Source of the DNA: Fimbriosthenelais zetlandica | Lineage: Eukaryota | DNA: 64,000 bases | Direction: 5' to 3' | Assembly: GCA_977030845.1 (NCBI GenBank) | Contig: OZ365114.1 | Span: 23,684,001-23,748,000, forward strand | Part shown: positions 24,037-62,358 of the stretch, one piece after another | Position numbering within the stretch: the stretch's first letter is position 1 | Layout: every line of letters starts with the position of its first letter | Notes under the pieces: model-generated | Databases searched by the model: none | What the model saw: the letters and a program-made list of their open reading frames with translations, nothing else | Told to the model about the DNA's origin: nothing | Program-made: the position numbers and the translations under genes

Positions 24037-24325
24037 TCATTGCATTCTTTCTTGTATCTGTTGCGGCTGATAGTGTGCAAAGGCGCCAAGTGGCTGAGGC
24101 ACGGCGGCGTAGGAATACGGTGTTGGTGTGACGTAGCCTGCTGCAGTCGTGTATGGGTAGGCGGCTTCATATCCGTTCGGGAACTGACTGGCAGCATAAC
24201 CAGTAGGGTAGTCCAATGCGAACTGGCCAGCAGTTGTTGGCGACAGTGGACTATGTGGTGATACTGGTATGGTCATTCCTGGTGTCGAGGCTACGTATGG
24301 ACTAGGATACATGTACTGGGGCAGC
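24037..24325 (-). CDS. RBM24: RBM24/RBM38 last coding exon (Tyr/Ala/Pro-rich tail ending HYQPQQIQERMQ*)
   Basis: Acceptor TTCTGTTTGCAG| at 24326, phase 2, matches exon 3. C-terminus resembles vertebrate RBM24/38 YQPQQLQTDRMQ. TGA at 24037-24039. Confidence 0.93.
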
Positions 24326-41352: not shown

Positions 41353-41410
41353 CCATATTGTCCAGGTACAAGGCTGGGGTAGGCGCCCTTCAGTGCAAGC
41401 GGCAGAGCAG
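41353..41410 (-). CDS. RBM24: RBM24/RBM38 coding exon 3 (AALPLALKGAYPSLVPGQYG)
   Basis: TTTTTTTTCCGCAG| acceptor, GG|GTAAGT donor, 58 nt. Phase 1 in and phase 2 out join exons 2 and 4 in frame. Confidence 0.9.
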
Positions 41411-45344: not shown

Positions 45345-45468
45345 CTGTTTGTATACCACGAGGCTTGGCTCCCAGGTAGGCGAGGTTCACGTTAGCTTTA
45401 CGGCCATCAATAACAGGGTTTGGCTCCTTGCACGCCCGTTCTGCAGCAGCTCTATCTGCCATCGTTAC
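45345..45468 (-). CDS. RBM24: RBM24/RBM38 coding exon 2 ([41 protein letters not shown])
   Basis: Near-identical to the second half of the vertebrate RBM24/38 RRM. TTTTTCCTCCAG| acceptor, G|GTGAG donor, 124 nt. Confidence 0.97.
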
Positions 45469-52760: not shown

Positions 52761-55520
52761 CTACTCATTTGCCCGGAGTTGTTGAACTTGGGCATATAGT
52801 GGTGTTGTGTGTTATAACGAACGCTGGGGGTGGTAGCTGCTCTCCGATTCTTTGTATATAGCCAATCGTGACCCCAGCGCCCCGAACACCTAAACAGAAC
52901 AAGCTGGCAAAAGACAACAGCAACTTGAAGAGCAGGGATGTGCTCGTTCAAGGGTGGGCATGATGGGGGCAAAGATGGATGCATGGCAGAGGTGGATACA
53001 AGACGTTAGCGTCCTTCTCAATAGACATGCTCATGTCTAATGCCATTTTAAAATTATCCCCAAGGACAAAAAATTTAACATATGAAGACCATAACACCCT
53101 AGAATAATACAAATGCGGACGCTCGGGTATGAATGAAAGATACTTCAGATTGAAAGTAAATGACTTCACGCACATGCTTGCATTAAAGTATGGACATGAT
53201 GGCACCTGAAGCCAGGCAAGCATATTGCTTATCCCCATTTAGACAATGCAACTAGCCAATAACTCGGAGCTGCTCCCCTGTTCACCATGTCTCAGGTGAT
53301 TTATGGTTGGAGTGCTTCCACCACTCGGAAGAAGATTTTACGACATCATTTGTGGGGGTAAATATGGCAGGGGAGTCAGGGGTGCTGCTCCAGAAGACCA
53401 CAAAACAAAGGGGCAATAAAGTGTTGTTGCCGGCACATGCGAACCTCCATTTCCGCCAAGATTGCTTGAACCAAAATATCGGCTTTCCACATTCGGAGGA
53501 TGTAAAAGAAAAAAGGTGAAACAGGTTTTCCGACACAAGGCAAAAAAATAAAATAAAAGACAATGGAGAACTCAAAAGCGTCATTAAATCTTTCAGGAAA
53601 TGTTCTATCGGCCCTAACTATATTCGATACACATCTCTGCCATCTTAACCTATTAAATGCTAATGTAGGAAATTGATAGGTACAATGTGCAACATGCTTC
53701 AAGTTCTGACTTCACTTTTTCTGCACTCCTAACATTTCTCCTCATTTTTCCCCCCTCACCCCTCGCCTTATCTAGAACCAACCACCCTCCTCCATCTCCC
53801 TTCCCCCTCAGCTGCTGTTTACATCATGAGCCCTTCAAACACGTCAGTATTGCCCGACATAACCATCTTTCCACGCCTTAAAATTAGCTCTATATACCAT
53901 CTTCACACTTCATAATTATACACCACCATAAGCTATAATTGTGTGTCAGGATACAAAACCATGTTATAAGCCAGGAACAGGTAGAGTTCTCAGGTATGTA
54001 GGGGATATATGTTTTCACTTAGACCATGAGAGAGGGTGAACAGGAATCATTATCCGCGATTATTACAGAAAGTGAATCCCTGATAGACTCCATGCTATTT
54101 TGACTAGGTGGGGAAGAATTTTGGCCTGGTTGCTTGGATTGATGGAATGGCATATGGCCAGCCTGGCTGTATAGTTGGCCTTGCTTGAGTTATGGCCCCC
54201 GTGCAGGGGGTTGAAGATGAAGTTGAGGAGAGGTGGGTGGGGATGGGGGTAGGGGTGGTAAAGGGTGGGGAGGAGGGAGATGGTAAGCTTGGGGTGAGTG
54301 TGTGTGTTTTTGTTAGGCCTAACCTATATCCTTGGCTGGAGGGATTAGTACACCAACCCAACCCCCACCCGTCTCTGAATCTCCTCCTCTCCCTCTCCAC
54401 TTTCATCCTCTCTCACATGTGAGGCAAGAGAAGCTTTGGCAACACTGAGTGGAAGATAATGGGGCCTGCAACAAGGCATGCCCTTGCCACGTTCAGAGAA
54501 CATGTGGTGGGAACTATATGGCCACGGGGGACGCTGAGTGGGAGACATGGGAGAATGGCTGAGGTAGACAGCAAGACAAGAGTGAAAGAGAAAGGACATA
54601 TATATGCAGCAGAAAGGAATGAGACTCTAGAGGTTAAGTAAAAAAACATTAAGAAGGAAATGTGGAGATCAAAGGAAGAGAGAGAATAGAGAGTGAAGTA
54701 GTTCAGTCATGAGTGACTCACAATCTGCTCGACCAACATGCTCCTCCAGCAGGGAGTAAGCTTACAGCTTTGTTTCATGACCCAGGCCATGCATACACAC
54801 ACCCATCGACCACTCTCTACTCCTTCCTCGATGAATTCAATATGTTATTGCAATATATTACACCTTGGCTTGCTCCCAAAGGAGCCAGCAGGCCAGACCC
54901 ACTTACCCCAGTCTGCTACTAATATAATATTATATTCAGTTCACCTATAAGATATTCTCCATGCTGGAGAACACGTGTACTAGACAGGCTCCCGTTTATA
55001 AAACTAAGGCACAGAACCTGTGGGGCCAAAATGCTTAAGAACTGATGCATGATATCCTTCTTGACTCACTGATATCTACATTTCAATGCAAGAAAATGGA
55101 TAGAAATCCACAAGCAAGCCTACCACTAATTGGAGTTAGTTAGATGATGCTATTTAGTACAAGAAAAGACCTCCACAAAGGACCTCTATTCCCCTGCCCA
55201 GCCATGTCTATTATGTCTCCGTTAGGAGAGTAAATAAGCAACCCGGGAGCAAAGATGGAACTAGGGGAAACCCAGATTGCCCTTCTTGAATGTTCAACTC
55301 CAAAGGACATATGATCTTCATAAAACTATCAACTTCAGCTAGTTCCTATACAGTAGATTGCAAGTCCATTTGTTCTTTTTGAATGGATATGATTATGTGA
55401 TTAGAAACAGTTCAAAAAGGCAATTACAGAAGAAACATATAGTTTCAGCAACAATTACTTTAGGTGATTGCCTTTTAAAAACTTTTGTTTGTGCAAGAAG
55501 TAAGAAAGTTTGAAACTTAC

Positions 55521-55700
55521 GAAGCCATATCCTCTGGACTTGCCCGTCTGTCTGTCAGTGATGACCACCGCTTCTTCTATCTCTCCAAACTGCTCAAAGA
55601 ATTCTCGGAGACTTTGATCCGTGGTGTGGTAGGGCAGCCCTCCAACAAAGATCTTGGTGAAGGTGGTGTCCTTCTGTTGGACTCCGGCGGCGTTAGCCAT
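55521..55700 (-). CDS. RBM24: RBM24/RBM38 coding exon 1 from the first AUG ([28 protein letters not shown]...KSRGYGF)
   Basis: [20 protein letters not shown] is the RBM24/38 signature (RNP2); KSRGYGF is RNP1. Strong Kozak gccATGg; donor TTC|GTAAGT. Likely a single pro-orthologue of RBM24 and RBM38. Confidence 0.97.
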
Positions 55701-56102
55701 GGCGAGAAGGGTTGAGTAGTCCGTGGTGGCGATTGGGAGAGGGGCAAGACCCAGAGAAGAATTTGAAGAAGTAATTGTGGTGTTTGCAGCAGCAGCTGAA
55801 GACTGCAAGACGAAGGCCGGGTGGTAGACCGGAGGTGCACTGAGGGCTTGTACTGGAGAAGATATGACGCCTGTGGGACAGCCAGGTACTCCTGCTTCTT
55901 CTCCGGATACTCCTCCTGTCTCTGTGAGGTTCTGTTGGAGGTGGTGGTGGTAGAAGCTCGGGGACGAGTTAGCTGCTGCTGCTGATGCTGCTGCTGCTGC
56001 TCCACCAAGTGATTCAACAAGTCCGTCCAGGTTGAAAGCGTGGTGGGATGATGTGCCAAGTGAAGCGAGGAAATTTGCCAAGAAGAAGTCACCTCCTATC
56101 AG
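55701..56102 (-). CDS. Candidate AUG-less N-terminal extension of RBM24/38 (134 codons from CTG 56102, or 127 from TTG 56081)
   Basis: Open and in frame with the RRM; Ala-, His- and Ser-rich tracts; bounded by TAG at 56103-56105; contains no ATG. Confidence 0.55.
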
Positions 56103-56610
56103 CTATGATACAGTCAGAACTGTAATATGTACAATACTCAATATAAGCACACAGAACTTGGTATCAAGTGGTAGGCAGTAGTATAGAATAGTGTAGCTGT
56201 TGTAGGTGAGGGATGAAGTGGGATGTTTCTCCTCAGTGTTATCTGTAGGGGAGTTTCGTGTATGCTGGAGGAGTCGTTGTAAAGTGGAGTGTTTAAGCCC
56301 TTTATCTGAGACGATTTGGAAGATTTCCTCCTGGCTTCAGTTTCCTAGACCCGAATGTGAAGAGAGCTGGTGGGACTATATAATATTGGGCTCGGCCTTG
56401 GCTTTCTCACGCTTCTGTATAGTGTACAAGCGTTGCTACTCCACGGCTTCTCCTTTGCCCACACTCCTCCACTGTTTCGCTCACGACTGTGGGACCACCT
56501 CCAGTAGCACCCAAAGGCTTTGACTTCCTCTTCTCCACCTCCACAGAACCCGGTAGGATATAAGCTCCTCCCTCTACTCCCGTTATCCACGCCTACCTAC
56601 ATAGATTAGC

Positions 56611-56650
56611 AGTCACGTGCCACTACCTTTTCCCAGCCAATCACGTGGAG
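56611..56650 (-). promoter_or_regulatory. Probable RBM24/38 proximal promoter (two CACGTG E-boxes and a CCAAT box)
   Basis: GTCACGTG about 56612-56619 and CAGCCAATCACGTGG 56634-56648, immediately upstream of the AUG-free leader. Confidence 0.55.
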
Positions 56651-56878
56651 CAGCGTCATCCAGAGGCTGTATTGACCTTCGACCTTCTAACCCCTTAAGA
56701 CCGATTGCTGATGACCTCTGGGGAGATGAAGGAGGGGAGGGGGTGGAGGAAGGGCTTTTGGGGCTCAAAGTGAGCCGACGCAAGAAGTCATGGAGATTTG
56801 TAATAACTATAACCGCGGGGTCTTTTGATTATAGTGCAAAGAAATACAGACGGCACGCTCGTATTTCCTCTGAGTTAT

Positions 56879-56908
56879 GTTGTCATGGAAACATGCCCCA
56901 GCATGCCC
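56879..56908. promoter_or_regulatory. RFX X-box overlapping a p53-family response element
   Basis: GTTGTCATGGAAAC 56879-56892. AAACATGCCC CAGCATGCCC 56889-56908 matches RRRCWWGYYY x2 at 19/20 with no spacer. Confidence 0.55.
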
Positions 56909-58088: not shown

Positions 58089-60834
58089 CTACAGGAGCAA
58101 AGAGACCATAGAGCATTATTGTTCTCCCTTACATGTAATTATCTATAAAAACCAATTCGCATATCATTAGATACATTGGACTATGTCTTATATATGTGGT
58201 GAATATATAGTGGCCATTAAGAGGCAATAAAAGTTAAAATGAAACATTTAAAGTTTTAGAAATATATGTTATAGGGGAAGTAGAATATCATCTAGGTATA
58301 TTCCATTAGCCTCATAAGAACAGAAGGGAAAACATGTCAATTCATTGTCATCCATTCACCCATGGAGTCTTGTAATGGGCACCCTCTATTTAACTGCAGA
58401 TGGCTCCAATGCAAAGGTTGACCGATTTTATGATGGCCTTTGTCATGTCATCCTTTAACAAATTGTTATAGCTTCACAGCCACGGGTTACGCTCCACAGA
58501 GACTGGAGACAGGCATGCAGGTTACCATGTGTTGTCAGGGAATCAGTATAAAATATGTATTATTCACTTCAGAGCATCTATCACTCATCTCCCTTCCCCT
58601 CTGTCCCATATGTGCCCCCACACACCTCTTCACAGTCGACTTGCCCATATGGAACATCTCAATAATACATGGAGTTATCCAAGCAGTAACTAATATAGCA
58701 AGGCACTAAACCTGCATGCAGGCACAACAAATCGGTTCAATTTTAGAAAGAAATTCAAAGGGTATCGGATGCAGTAGGTATAATATGGCCTGTTTCCTGG
58801 AATTAAATTGCAATGCAGCCCTTTAAAAATGAGATAAATCTTACAAAAGTAGGTTCGCAAGTTTGTTAATTGATGACTTCTATATGATCTGCACTGCACT
58901 AATACATATGGCTCATATTTTAAGTGTAAATTGTTAGATGAGAGCCGTTTGTCATTACAGGCTGATACATAGGAATTTAGCATTAGCCTATGCGGGACCT
59001 CAATGATTTAATTAGAGGTATGATCCGAGGTGAGCGACTGATCAAACAATGAAAGAGAAGGACCGCAGTGAATACGGCCACACATTGGATAATAATGTTG
59101 GCTGATTTAACACCCCCGATAATACGATACCTGAATCTTAATCAGATAAGAGTATTATTAAGGGTTTTTTTTGCCACGATAACTGAGTGTTTGCTCATTC
59201 GAGACGACAAGATTAATATGTAGTACGCGGTAGATACTCCAGGGGCATCTTAGCTTATACATGTACATGAAGGTTACTTTCGCAGTGTCGGAGACTGGTG
59301 GCAGAATCGGAAAGTACAACTGTCGGGTGAAGATAACATTAACCTTGATAAAGTGTAGCCTATACGAGATGGGTGGGTCGGTGGAAGTAATAAACACTTC
59401 TATTTACATGTATATTTATGGTAGATGTGTTCAGAAAGAAGAGATTCGTGAAAACTTGATAAAAACGGTCATTGTCTCTAATTACTTTATTCAGGGACCC
59501 CTTTTATGACATGGAGGTGGGTGAGGGCAATAGTGGCAATAGTACATATATATTTATCGTCTGGCGTATTTAGGATACTTGTTCGTAGTAGGAAAATTTT
59601 CATCTACGTTACCTCTCTTAAATTCAGGGATGACAATTAACCTATACGTGTTTCTAATTCTTACAAGACATATGGTCACGGTAATTATTATTTTGGTAGG
59701 ATCAAAGAAGTAATCATGATTGTATAGGGATGATTAGCTGGTGTAATACTATGAGCATCTATAACGTAGGGGGTCTGTGCCCCAATGCTCTCCCGAACAT
59801 ATCCGAAAAGAAGGACACATCAAAAGTGATAACATAATTAGGTATGTGTACCAGACTTGTCAATGCTATTACAAGTGGCCTGCATTTAATATTCCTGGTT
59901 TTATAGTGTAACATATATAGGCCTGGGGTCAATATATGCTACCAGCATCCCTGAATTGTATATAATGTAGATACCGAGATCCACTGGCCATTCAAGCACA
60001 TCCCACGACTCGGGCGCATCACGTCACACACTAGACCGGAAAATTCACAGCCAAAAATATAACAAAACTGGGACAATCCTGGGACCGTTCAAAATAGTAG
60101 AGAGACATCTCTCAAGCAAACGGGAAGAATCAAGGCGTAGGCCTACATTGCAATATAGATACAGATCAGGCCATTTAAAGTAGGTTTAATTTTCAATGTC
60201 ACTTTCTACCAGAACCAATTCATATAAAATTCTTCGGGAGTTTCCAATCACTTTAATTCTTTGGTGAGATTTTCTAGACAACTGGAACTATTATTGTTCG
60301 TATTTGGTTTCCTCAATGATCTCTATAAAGCGAATTATAAATAAAACTGTTTATAGAAGCATAAATTTATATAAAATCCGAAATAGAGGGACTTTCATTG
60401 CCAAAACTGGTCCAAACATTTTTTAAATTTTGATTGTTCAGTTGGATGATGATAACTTATATGTGCGATTCATAACCAAGTCAGACATATCTAATTTATT
60501 TTATCTCTAGTAGTTAACGACTGCCTATGATATGCAGTGAAGTATTATGATAAGATATGGTTATTACTTTTGTGCCATCATATAGCCTAGGTCTAGTGCC
60601 TATTGTTACTTATCGTTCAAATTCCGATGGAAAAATACCGTGAATTCACTCAGTCTGAAGACAGGAAAATTACCTGAGAGGTCAAGCTCGGAAAACTAGT
60701 ATAAAGTAAAGAATTCCCAAATGTTTGTGCATTCCACATCAAAGGCGATTTGGTTCTGTGTGCGTATACACTATAGGCTGTGGTAAAAAACAATAACGCC
60801 ATTGTCAAGCTTATTTCATGCAGAAGCTATAAAT

Positions 60835-61075
60835 ATGCTAAAGAATACGAAAGAAAATGAGAATGGTATCGTGGAAGAGCAGGCTGTATTCAAACAAAAG
60901 GCTTCAGATAAAAACTCTGTCGCTCCAACTATTGAGGAGGAGCTACAAGCCAAAGCAAGCAAATGGGGGAAGACAGTGACGGGCGCCGAATTTGCCAGGA
61001 AGATGGATGAAATGGATAATCTTGCCCATCTACGAGAGGAATTCCATTATCCAAAATGTGGTGGTCTGCCAGACA
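60835..61075 (+). CDS. KYNU: Kynureninase coding exon 1
   Basis: MLKNTKENE...DEMDNLAHLREEFHYPK resembles KYNU DEEDKLRHFRECFYIPK. Donor A|GTGAGT, phase 1. Possible acceptor at 60823 suggests an upstream non-coding exon. Confidence 0.9.
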
Positions 61076-61618
61076 GTGAGTCCAATTCTTATTGATAGTT
61101 ATACTAGTTTTTGAACTGCATATATATAGGCCTGGAATACGTGAATACGTGCGTATGTCGTACAGAATTGATATTAAATGAATTACTTAGATAGAAAGTG
61201 GCAACAATAACTTGGATCGAGTGGGCATATTCATCGCTATTGTTCTCTGGCTCATGTACATTGTGTTTACCCGTAAAATATAACTTATGATGGTGGTAAA
61301 TAAAATTATATTAATCGATAGCTAGCCGCTACGTCTAAATTATATACAAAGGGAATGCCATTTTGCACTGCTTGGGCTATATATATCATCACCTATAGTG
61401 CCACAGTAAATCATCATTGCTCCACTCCCTATCAATTCATCCCAGATAAAATAGCCTTTTACAAGCCCATATTCATTACTAATATATAGCTGAATCTGTC
61501 CAGTACGGAATTAAAAATCATCCAGAAAAGATGTTTTGTCAGTGCGCGGAACATAATACATGTAAGTCTGTTTCTAATGAACAATATCTAATGAACATCT
61601 TCATCCTAATTGTTTCAG

Positions 61619-61739
61619 TTGACTTAACTCTCGTGGATAAGGACAGTGACTGTGTGTATTTCTGTGGAAATTCCCTGGGACTTCCTCCCAAGAAAGTGAA
61701 AACATACATAAAGAGGGAGCTCGATAAATGGGCTACGAT
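61619..61739 (+). CDS. KYNU: Kynureninase coding exon 2 ([39 protein letters not shown])
   Basis: YFxGNSLGL signature; AG/GT boundaries; 121 nt, phase 1 to 2. Confidence 0.97.
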
Positions 61740-62358
61740 GTAAGTAAGCTACTCATGCCATTGTACAACCATAGGATAATGCACTGTTGTACAATGACCT
61801 TAGCGTATATAATTTTTAAGCTCTCGCAATGCGATTGGACGTCTCTTTCGTATAGAATTAGGCAGCCATGGATCAATTGTCTTCGCATTCGTGGGCAATT
61901 TCAAATCTACTGCCACGCTTCCGGAGTCATGGCTACTTCCGGTGTTGGTATTGGCTATAGGGACTGAATGGTGAACAGATTGTCTACCAATGTGAGGCGG
62001 TACAATGCCGCTCTGATTTAAGAAGAAAACTTACTTCTTATTCGTTTATGAAAGGGATAACTTGGGTGAAGTTTCCTACTGACAGTACGCCTATTAATAT
62101 GTTGAAAGGCTGCTGAACAGGGCAGATAAAATGAGTTTATGTAGGGCCTCTATGGTAGCAGAATATAGGGTGTCTACAACTCCCTTTGCATTCAGAGACA
62201 AATCAAAGACTAGCTGAAAGTGGGGGAACTAGAACTGCTATCTGTAATGGATGGCGTTAGTTATCTTAGCATTCAGCAGTTAAACAAATGTGTATGCCTG
62301 GTCCTCAGCCTGATAGTTCTCAGCCTAATAGACAATTGTTTATCTTTGTTTTATACAG

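What the first reader, a model, noticed from the sequence alone, without database searches (positions are those of the whole stretch)
55701..56599. AUG-free 900-nt leader and a 134-codon in-frame extension: candidate non-AUG-initiated RBM24/38 isoform
Seen: no ATG in any frame on the minus strand from 56599 to 55701 (scanned by eye; roughly 10-15 expected by chance). The proximal 402 nt are open and in frame with the RRM and encode regulatory-type low complexity ([34 protein letters not shown]). Candidate starts are CTG 56102, directly after an in-frame TAG, and TTG 56081 (ttcTTGg). Established: CUG/UUG initiation produces N-extended proteoforms, and leaky scanning to a downstream AUG requires no upstream AUGs. 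Inference: two proteoforms, one with an extra disordered domain. Alternative: an upstream AUG exon splices in at the weak AG at 56097/56096.
Basis: partly seen in the sequence, partly recalled or inferred. Interest (0 to 1): 0.75.

Follow-up and report, generated by a model that had tools for sequence, protein, structure and literature searches.

The report
AUG-free leader, likely CUG-started RBM24/38 extension
The first exon of an invertebrate RBM24/38 RNA-binding-protein gene has a roughly 0.9-kb leader with no AUG at all, and comparison with a related species suggests, without proving it, that some ribosomes start early at a conserved CUG and add a floppy 110-residue head to the protein.

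Summary
On the minus strand no ATG starts between 56601 and 55701 (901 nt). Dinucleotide shuffles expect 8.2, and 0 of 5000 had none. TAG 56105-56103 is followed by 134 open codons in frame with the RRM.

The gene is a four-exon RBM24/38 orthologue of 216 aa. One spliced RNA contig from a related species (L001; 97.7% protein identity, dS 0.63) also has an ATG-free leader of at least 728 nt (2 of 5000 shuffles). Its distal part cannot be aligned to the window.

Conservation begins 5 nt before an in-frame CTG (56030; A at -3, G at +4 in both species). It continues as three frame-preserving blocks in an open frame. That frame shows codon-like periodicity, and differences favour third codon positions.

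L001 gives no support to an upstream AUG exon.

Best reading (about 0.55): an unspliced, uAUG-free scanning leader. The main start is AUG 55700 (gccAUGg). A minor CUG 56030 start adds 110 residues (71 in L001). An ACG at 55724 is a further possible start.

There are only two species, and no reads were listed for this one. Five more distant orthologues lack the extension. If real, this is a new member of a known kind.

The parts
55701..56601 (-). ATG-free transcript leader (901 nt with no ATG in any frame); probably one unspliced 5' exon segment
   Evidence: 0 ATG against 8.2 expected, 0 of 5000 shuffles. The related transcript L001 has at least 728 nt without ATG. ATG density is normal again from 56602 upward.
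56556..56647 (-). Promoter-like motifs just above the ATG-free run: CACGTG 56647-56642 and 56619-56614, ATTGG (inverted CCAAT) 56641-56637, TATA-like CTTATATCC 56564-56556. Implied start of transcription is near 56530 (inference only).
   Evidence: Read directly. GC is raised from 55550 to 56900. The 5' end of L001 aligns weakly with 56487-56455 (E 0.43).
56103..56105 (-). In-frame TAG that closes the frame upstream; 134 open codons follow
56028..56030 (-). Conserved in-frame CTG in a strong context (ttcaacCTGg; L001 ctcaccCTGg): proposed non-AUG start, 110 codons before the AUG
   Evidence: Nucleotide conservation with L001 begins at 56035, 5 nt upstream.
55970..56035 (-). Conserved block B1: CTG, LDGLVES and a (GCA)n poly-Ala run; 85% identical to L001 511-576, same frame
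55873..55899 (-). Conserved block B2 (..GVPxCPT..); 81% identical to L001 599-625, same frame
55701..55746 (-). Conserved block B3 ([15 protein letters not shown]); 93% identical. All 3 differences are synonymous third-position changes.
55722..55724 (-). Conserved in-frame ACG in the context gccaccACGg, 8 codons before the AUG. A second possible near-cognate start; it sits where the intronless relative P0197 has its first Met.
55521..55700 (-). Exon 1 coding part from the canonical AUG (ctcgccATGg): [21 protein letters not shown]..., the first half of the RRM. The splice donor GT is at 55520.
   Evidence: RRM_1 E 8.8e-15
45345..45468 (-). Exon 2 (second half of the RRM)
41353..41410 (-). Exon 3
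24037..24325 (-). Exon 4 coding part, ending in TGA 24039-24037

Best explanation
The stretch is the 5' part of exon 1 of an RBM24/38 (SEB-4-type) RNA-binding-protein gene on the minus strand.

The mRNA carries an unspliced leader of roughly 0.83-0.9 kb that selection keeps free of AUG, so scanning 40S subunits reach the coding region unhindered. Most of them start at AUG 55700, which has a strong context (gccAUGg), and make the 216-aa protein.

A minority is proposed to start 110 codons upstream at the conserved CUG 56030 (A at -3, G at +4), and perhaps also at ACG 55724 (gccaccACGg). With no AUG in between, leaky scanning would then give two or three proteoforms from one mRNA. The long form carries an Ala/Ser/Thr/Pro-rich, presumably disordered N-terminal region with three conserved short motifs (LDGLVES, GVPx[21 protein letters not shown]).

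Shown: the ATG-free run, the gene model, and the comparative signatures in two species. Inferred: the transcription start, initiation at CUG or ACG, the ratio of forms, and any function of the extension.
For: 1. ATG-free leader.
- Window: 901 nt, 0 of 5000 shuffles.
- Related spliced RNA contig L001: 728 nt, 2 of 5000 shuffles.
- The two distal leaders cannot be aligned (CDS dS 0.63). The absence of ATG is therefore maintained, not merely inherited.
- Five further orthologue transcripts are also poor in uATG.

2. The frame is open from the CTG to the AUG in both species: 110 and 71 codons, shuffle P 0.058 and 0.11. In L001 the other two frames have stops.

3. All three significant nucleotide blocks keep the frame. 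The length differences between them are 48 and 69 nt.

4. Conservation starts 5 nt before the CTG. CTG 56030 and ACG 55724 are the only in-frame near-cognate codons with both a -3 purine and +4 G, and both are conserved.

5. Differences inside the blocks fall 3, 4 and 10 on codon positions 1, 2 and 3 (P 0.027). B3 has 3 synonymous and 0 non-synonymous changes.

6. The peptide alignment scores best in frame 0: 140 against 102 and 92.

7. Three-base periodicity (G at position 1, C at position 2, as in the CDS) gives p 5e-8 and 6e-7 in the two extensions. The window's distal leader shows none (p 0.39).

8. An intronless relative, P0197, begins MDYTMLLAMANA. This matches [12 protein letters not shown] here, so these residues are read as protein in a relative.
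Against: - Only two species carry the extension, and they are close.
- Five more distant orthologue transcripts have in-frame stops 2-40 codons upstream.
- No protein anywhere resembles the extension.
- Overall omega is 0.45, and B1 taken alone is not codon-like (omega 0.68).
- B1 and B3 are also more conserved at synonymous sites than the CDS (pS about 0.2 against 0.43). This fits RNA-level constraint as well.
- The leader is rich in triplet repeats, which produce 3n indels and periodicity without coding. With the (GCA)n run removed, periodicity weakens to p 0.0045 and 0.057.
- The (GCA)n hairpin after the CTG is no more stable than shuffles and starts about 28 nt downstream, not the roughly 15 nt that favours non-AUG starts (PMC3105428).
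- No RNA or DNA run was listed for this species, so the transcription start and the lack of splicing are inferred.
Confidence: 0.55

Rival explanations
1. It is an ordinary long 5' UTR kept free of uAUGs, and translation starts only at AUG 55700. The three conserved blocks are RNA-level elements: start-site context, protein-binding or structural sites, and a triplet microsatellite. The open, in-frame reading and the periodicity are by-products of C-rich triplet-repeat sequence. At most, ACG 55724 adds 8 residues, as a relic of an older AUG.
For: - B1 and B3 are conserved beyond synonymous expectation (pS about 0.2 against 0.43 in the CDS).
- B1 shows no codon bias in its differences (3, 2, 4).
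- Triplet repeats also occur in the non-coding distal leader of L001, which shows weak periodicity (p 0.03).
- All three frames are nearly stop-free in the window.
- More distant orthologues manage without any extension.
- No homologue of the extension exists.
- The first Met of P0197 sits at the ACG position. A short ancestral coding stretch could therefore explain part of B3.
Against: - It needs several coincidences: both spacers differing by multiples of 3, and the frame open in both species while the other two frames of L001 carry stops.
- It also needs 10 of 17 differences at third positions, with all 3 in B3 synonymous, and frame 0 giving the best peptide alignment.
- The conservation edge lies exactly at a CTG with A at -3 and G at +4.
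- In B3 the 21 nt upstream of the ACG are conserved too, further than a start context needs.
Confidence: 0.32
2. The extension is translated, but from a normal AUG supplied by an alternative upstream exon or promoter that the one available transcript does not show.
For: - It cannot be excluded without reads from this species.
- Long AUG-started N-terminal extensions exist in RBM24/38 genes of other invertebrates (P0035, P0006, P0064, P0073).
Against: - The related mRNA L001 is continuous through the shared GGAGGTGAC motif and has no ATG in 728 nt. It carries an in-frame TGA right at that motif, so a splice there would end at once.
- There is no AG in 56045-56028, where conservation begins.
- The ATG-free run extends unbroken for 500 nt above the proposed acceptor. 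That is expected of exon sequence, not of an intron.
- The other invertebrate extensions show no significant similarity beyond poly-Ala.
Confidence: 0.06
3. The ATG-free run and the open frame are chance features picked out after scanning many windows.
For: The finding was selected after the fact from a genome-wide scan. The open frame in the window alone has P of only 0.03-0.06.
Against: - 0 of 5000 shuffles reproduce the ATG-free run.
- An independent, unalignable leader in a second species is ATG-free as well (2 of 5000).
- The comparative signals were not part of the selection.
Confidence: 0.03

Closest known systems
[quoted passage not shown] 2011, PMC3105428; classic cases FGF2, MYC and PTEN-L, the last three from my own knowledge)
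   Same: - An open frame upstream of the annotated AUG, closed by an in-frame stop, with no in-frame AUG.
- Conservation ending at a near-cognate codon (CUG, the most used) in a good Kozak context.
- No AUG between the two starts, so leaky scanning can give two forms.
- A Ka/Ks near 0.4 is also seen in accepted cases such as ANKRD42.
   Different: - It rests on two close species rather than a deep alignment.
- There is no ribosome or protein evidence.
- The extension is low-complexity and restricted to this lineage.
- The whole 0.9-kb leader, not only the stretch between the starts, is free of AUG.
RBM24 / RBM38 (RNPC1, SEB-4) family of single-RRM post-transcriptional regulators
   Same: - RRM split over exons 1 and 2, followed by an Ala/Pro/Tyr-rich tail ending ...QPQQIQERMQ.
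- 66-75% identity to proteins named RBM24 or RBM38 in molluscs and brachiopods.
   Different: Isoforms described for the family arise by alternative splicing (one search lists such papers). No paper in the library links RBM24 or RBM38 to non-AUG initiation.
AUG-started N-terminal extensions of RBM24/38 in other invertebrates (P0035, P0006/P0115, P0064, P0073/75/80)
   Same: Extra low-complexity residues (about 60-260) encoded in the same exon, directly before the ..[13 protein letters not shown] start of the RRM.
   Different: They start with AUG. They show no significant similarity to this extension beyond poly-Ala runs, so they are probably independent.

Membership tests
[quoted passage not shown] | At least 50 open in-frame codons upstream of the annotated AUG, closed by a stop, with no in-frame AUG in between | tested here: met
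   134 codons after TAG 56105 in the window; 87 codons after a TGA in L001. There is no ATG in any frame.
[quoted passage not shown] | The extension lies within the mature mRNA, and no transcript supplies an upstream AUG | tested here: inconclusive
   Met in the related species: spliced contig L001 has a 728-nt ATG-free leader. For the window's own species no sequencing run was listed.
[quoted passage not shown] | The frame is uninterrupted by stops or frameshifts in orthologues, with amino-acid conservation | tested here: inconclusive
   Held in the one close relative: three in-frame blocks and 47 of 73 aligned residues identical. Five more distant orthologues have stops and no extension.
[quoted passage not shown] | [quoted passage not shown] | tested here: met
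   CTG 56030: aacCTGg here and accCTGg in L001. Conservation begins at 56035.
[quoted passage not shown] | Purifying selection on the peptide (Ka/Ks below 1, third-position bias) | tested here: inconclusive
   Omega is 0.45 over 71 aligned codons, 0 in B3, 0.22 in B2 and 0.68 in B1. Ten of 17 differences are at position 3 (P 0.027). The numbers are small.
[quoted passage not shown] | Initiation at the non-AUG codon, or the longer protein, observed experimentally | not testable with these tools
   No ribosome profiling, proteomics or even RNA reads could be reached for this organism.
RBM24/RBM38 (SEB-4) family | A single N-terminal RRM with the family's near-invariant sequence ([11 protein letters not shown].., RGYGFVTM), followed by a low-complexity tail | tested here: met
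   Pfam RRM_1 E 8.8e-15. Best named hits are RBM24 or RBM38 of molluscs and brachiopods at 66-72% identity.

The most novel reading that the evidence does not exclude
In this lineage a stretch of triplet-repeat-rich 5' leader of the RBM24/38 gene has recently become coding. A CUG in a strong context now feeds a 70-110-residue disordered head onto an otherwise extremely conserved RNA-binding protein, while the old AUG form is still made. That would be a caught-in-the-act example of a new protein region born from a UTR through non-AUG initiation. The strict absence of AUG over 0.9 kb would be the condition that allows it.
Probability: 0.35. Interest if true: 0.6.

Novelty: new member of a known kind. 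Interest (0 to 1): 0.45.

Why it matters
RBM24/38 proteins are dosage-sensitive regulators of splicing, mRNA stability and translation in muscle, heart and p53 pathways. Their known isoforms come from splicing.

A conserved CUG-started long form would add a translational way of making isoforms in this family. It would also give a tractable invertebrate case of how a disordered N-terminal region arises from leader sequence.

The 0.9-kb leader without a single AUG, maintained in two species while its sequence drifted, is itself a clean example of selection on scanning. The practical value is modest. It is a well-defined, cheaply testable prediction, not a new mechanism.

Tried and rejected
- **Reads from this species.** Two searches for sequencing runs (RNA, then any) listed none (one search failed as busy). 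The transcription start and splicing could therefore not be checked directly, and read laying was not used.
- **Homologues of the extension.**
  - The word-indexed search restricted to residues 25-134 found none at E up to 10. The candidate list may have been swamped by poly-Ala proteins.
  - The exhaustive HMMER search of 1.84 billion representatives found none at E up to 0.001.
  - Two scans of JGI metagenome contigs found none.
  - Pfam found only the RRM.
  - The ESM Atlas gave only weak low-complexity look-alikes, score 0.82 at best.
- **Homology to AUG-started N-extensions of other invertebrate RBM24/38.** Motifs such as LPTIATASHTLI looked similar by eye. Smith-Waterman scores against shuffles were not significant, apart from poly-Ala matches to insect proteins. 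Rejected.
- **A start-enhancing hairpin after the CTG.** The (GCA)n run folds in both species, but no better than shuffles (z +0.5 to -0.6) and about 28 nt downstream. Not used as support.
- **Known RNA families in the leader.** Only a sub-threshold n-myc IRES hit on the opposite strand (12 bits against a cut-off of 40). Noise.
- **DNA of the intronless relatives P0004 and P0197.** It could not be fetched because the sample file is too large.
Rejected as conserved features.
- **The + strand ORFs near 60.8-61.7 kb.** My guess that they are kynureninase exons got no Pfam support. Dropped.

Full report
**1. What is there**

Reading the minus strand shows the first coding exon of an RBM24/38-type gene. 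ATG 55700 opens [60 protein letters not shown], followed by a GT donor at 55520.

With the help of a related transcript the full model is:
- exon 1 to 55521
- exon 2, 45468-45345
- exon 3, 41410-41353
- exon 4, 24325-24037

This gives a 216-aa protein. Pfam finds RRM_1 at E 8.8e-15. The nearest named proteins are RBM24 or RBM38 of bivalves, gastropods, cephalopods and a brachiopod at 66-72% identity. The organism is an unnamed invertebrate whose nearest named hits are molluscs and a brachiopod. Its genome is 447 Mb in 79 pieces.

**2. The observation**

On the minus strand, ATGs start at 56602 and at 55700 and nowhere between, a gap of 901 nt.
- Dinucleotide-preserving shuffles of the stretch contain 8.2 ATGs on average, and none of 5000 had zero.
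- The window's own density would predict about 20.
- Scaled by density, this is the largest gap of any trinucleotide on either strand of the 64-kb window.
- The in-frame stop is TAG 56105-56103, and 134 codons are open up to the ATG.

**3. Evidence from a related species**

Protein P0001 (216 aa) is 97.7% identical to the window's protein. It is encoded on a spliced RNA-derived Logan contig, L001, with 728 nt before its ATG.

The two coding sequences differ at synonymous sites by dS 0.63 and hardly at all in protein (dN 0.011). Unconstrained sequence should therefore be close to unalignable. Four things follow.

- (a) The 728-nt leader of L001 also has no ATG (5.75 expected; 2 of 5000 shuffles). 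Its distal 510 nt do not align with the window, apart from a weak colinear match of its first 33 nt to 56487-56455 (E 0.43). The absence of ATG is thus kept while the sequence changes, which points to selection against upstream AUGs.
- (b) Significant nucleotide similarity is confined to three blocks:
  - 56035-55970 (85% identical)
  - 55899-55873 (81%)
  - 55746-55701 (93%)
- (c) All three blocks are in the same frame relative to the ATG in both species. The spacers differ by 48 and 69 nt.
- (d) The frame is open in both species from a shared CTG: 110 codons here and 71 in L001. In L001 the other two frames carry 1 and 3 stops.

**4. Where the frame would start**

Upstream of 56035 there is no conservation. 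The one shared motif there, GGAGGTGAC, is read GGA GGT GAC in the window but A GGT GA C, with an in-frame TGA, in L001.

Listing every in-frame near-cognate codon shows that only two have both a purine at -3 and G at +4. Both are conserved:
- CTG 56030 (ttcaacCTGg here, ctcaccCTGg in L001), at the very edge of conservation
- ACG 55724 (gccaccACGg in both), 8 codons before the AUG

The AUG itself has a strong context (ctcgccATGg). According to PMC3105428, CUG is the most efficient non-AUG start, context is crucial, and a conserved near-cognate at the edge of conservation is the final criterion for such extensions.

**5. Is the stretch coding?**

For:
- Inside the three blocks, differences fall 3, 4 and 10 on codon positions 1, 2 and 3 (P 0.027). 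In B3 all three are synonymous. For comparison, exon 1 of the CDS has 0, 0 and 21.
- Peptide alignment is best in frame 0: score 140 against 102 and 92.
- Base composition has a strong three-base period in the ATG frame (G at position 1, C at position 2, as in the CDS), with p 5e-8 here and 6e-7 in L001. The window's distal leader has none (p 0.39).
- This xCx codon bias also explains why the other frames of the window have few stops.
- An intronless relative in another assembly, P0197, begins MDYTMLLAMANA, against [12 protein letters not shown] here. Its first Met sits at the ACG position.

Against:
- Omega is 0.45 overall and 0.68 in B1.
- B1 and B3 are more conserved at synonymous sites than the CDS, which suggests RNA-level constraint as well.
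- Triplet repeats (GCA here, CTA/CCA in the distal leader of L001) generate 3n indels and periodicity without coding. Without the GCA run, periodicity drops to p 0.0045 and 0.057.
- Only two close species are available.
- The extension has no homologue anywhere.
- Five more distant orthologue transcripts (L002, L003, L018, L019, L020) have in-frame stops 2-40 codons upstream.

**6. The leader as such**

The ATG-free run ends about 40 nt above a TATA-like CTTATATCC (56564-56556). Two CACGTG boxes and an inverted CCAAT lie at 56647-56614. GC content is raised from 55550 to 56900.

This fits a transcription start near 56530 and an unspliced leader of about 830 nt, because an intron would not be kept free of ATG. 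This is inference.

The other orthologue leaders are also poor in uATG. For example, L018 has 3 in 798 nt against about 12 expected, and L020 has none in about 330 nt. The intronless paralogue in this genome has about 360 ATG-free nt after its TATA box. Avoidance of upstream AUGs thus looks like a family habit, taken to an extreme here.

**7. Mechanism proposed**

The proposal is cap-dependent scanning along an AUG-free leader. A minority of ribosomes would initiate at CUG 56030, possibly also at ACG 55724, and the majority at AUG 55700.

One mRNA would then give a 216-aa form and a 326-aa form (287 aa in the relative). The extra part is Ala/Ser/Thr/Pro-rich with three conserved short motifs. 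I put this at 0.55.

The main rival, at 0.32, is a plain regulated 5' UTR whose conserved blocks act as RNA. An unseen AUG exon gets 0.06 and chance 0.03.

**8. Comparison with what is known**

It works like the conserved non-AUG N-terminal extensions catalogued in mammals (PMC3105428). It meets their sequence criteria as far as two species allow. The experimental criterion is untested.

No paper in the library connects RBM24 or RBM38 with non-AUG initiation. AUG-started extensions in other invertebrate RBM24/38 genes are not demonstrably related.

**9. Verdict**

The kind of thing is known, and this would be a new, lineage-restricted member that awaits one RNA and one ribosome or protein experiment.

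Noticed in passing
L004 (G000:C19:16888717-16889436, minus strand); not in the window: An intronless paralogue of the RBM24/38 gene sits in the same genome. It has 67% identity over all 216 residues in a 248-codon open frame with no stops. It begins MLLAMANS.., with a TGA three codons before that ATG. It has its own CCAAT and TATAAAGG boxes and about 360 ATG-free nt before the start. It is probably an old retrogene that kept the last residues (LLA) of the parent's extension.
   Followed up: partly
P0004 and P0197 (ENA assembly ERZ26222911; no DNA obtainable): Two intronless copies in another species begin MLLAMANA and MDYTMLLAMANA. The first ATG of P0197 lies exactly where the window and L001 have ACG in the context gccaccACGg. 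The start codon may have moved between AUG and ACG during evolution.
   Followed up: partly
L018, L019, L020, L002, L003 (orthologue transcripts): The leaders of five other RBM24/38 orthologue transcripts are poor in upstream ATGs: about 3-5 seen against about 25 expected in total. L018 has 3 in 798 nt. Avoidance of uAUGs may be general in this gene family.
   Followed up: partly
window 56556-56647, minus strand: Two CACGTG E-boxes, an inverted CCAAT box and a TATA-like CTTATATCC lie directly above the ATG-free run. They look like the core promoter. Another first-stage note (s1-193491) places an RFX/p53-like element at 56879-56908, which I did not test.
   Followed up: no
window 55701-56030, minus strand: All three reading frames are almost free of stops: 2 seen against about 8 expected (P 0.002). 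This is explained by the xCx codon bias (C at 47% of second positions), not by multi-frame coding.
   Followed up: yes
L001 262-297 and window 55928-55956: Runs of CTA/CCA triplets occur in the distal, stop-containing leader of L001, and a similar CCA run lies inside the window's open frame. The triplet-repeat material seems to move or arise independently along these leaders.
   Followed up: no
window 60802-61743, plus strand: ORFs that look like the first exons of a neighbouring, divergently placed gene. Pfam gave no hit for the two fragments tried, so they remain unidentified.
   Followed up: partly
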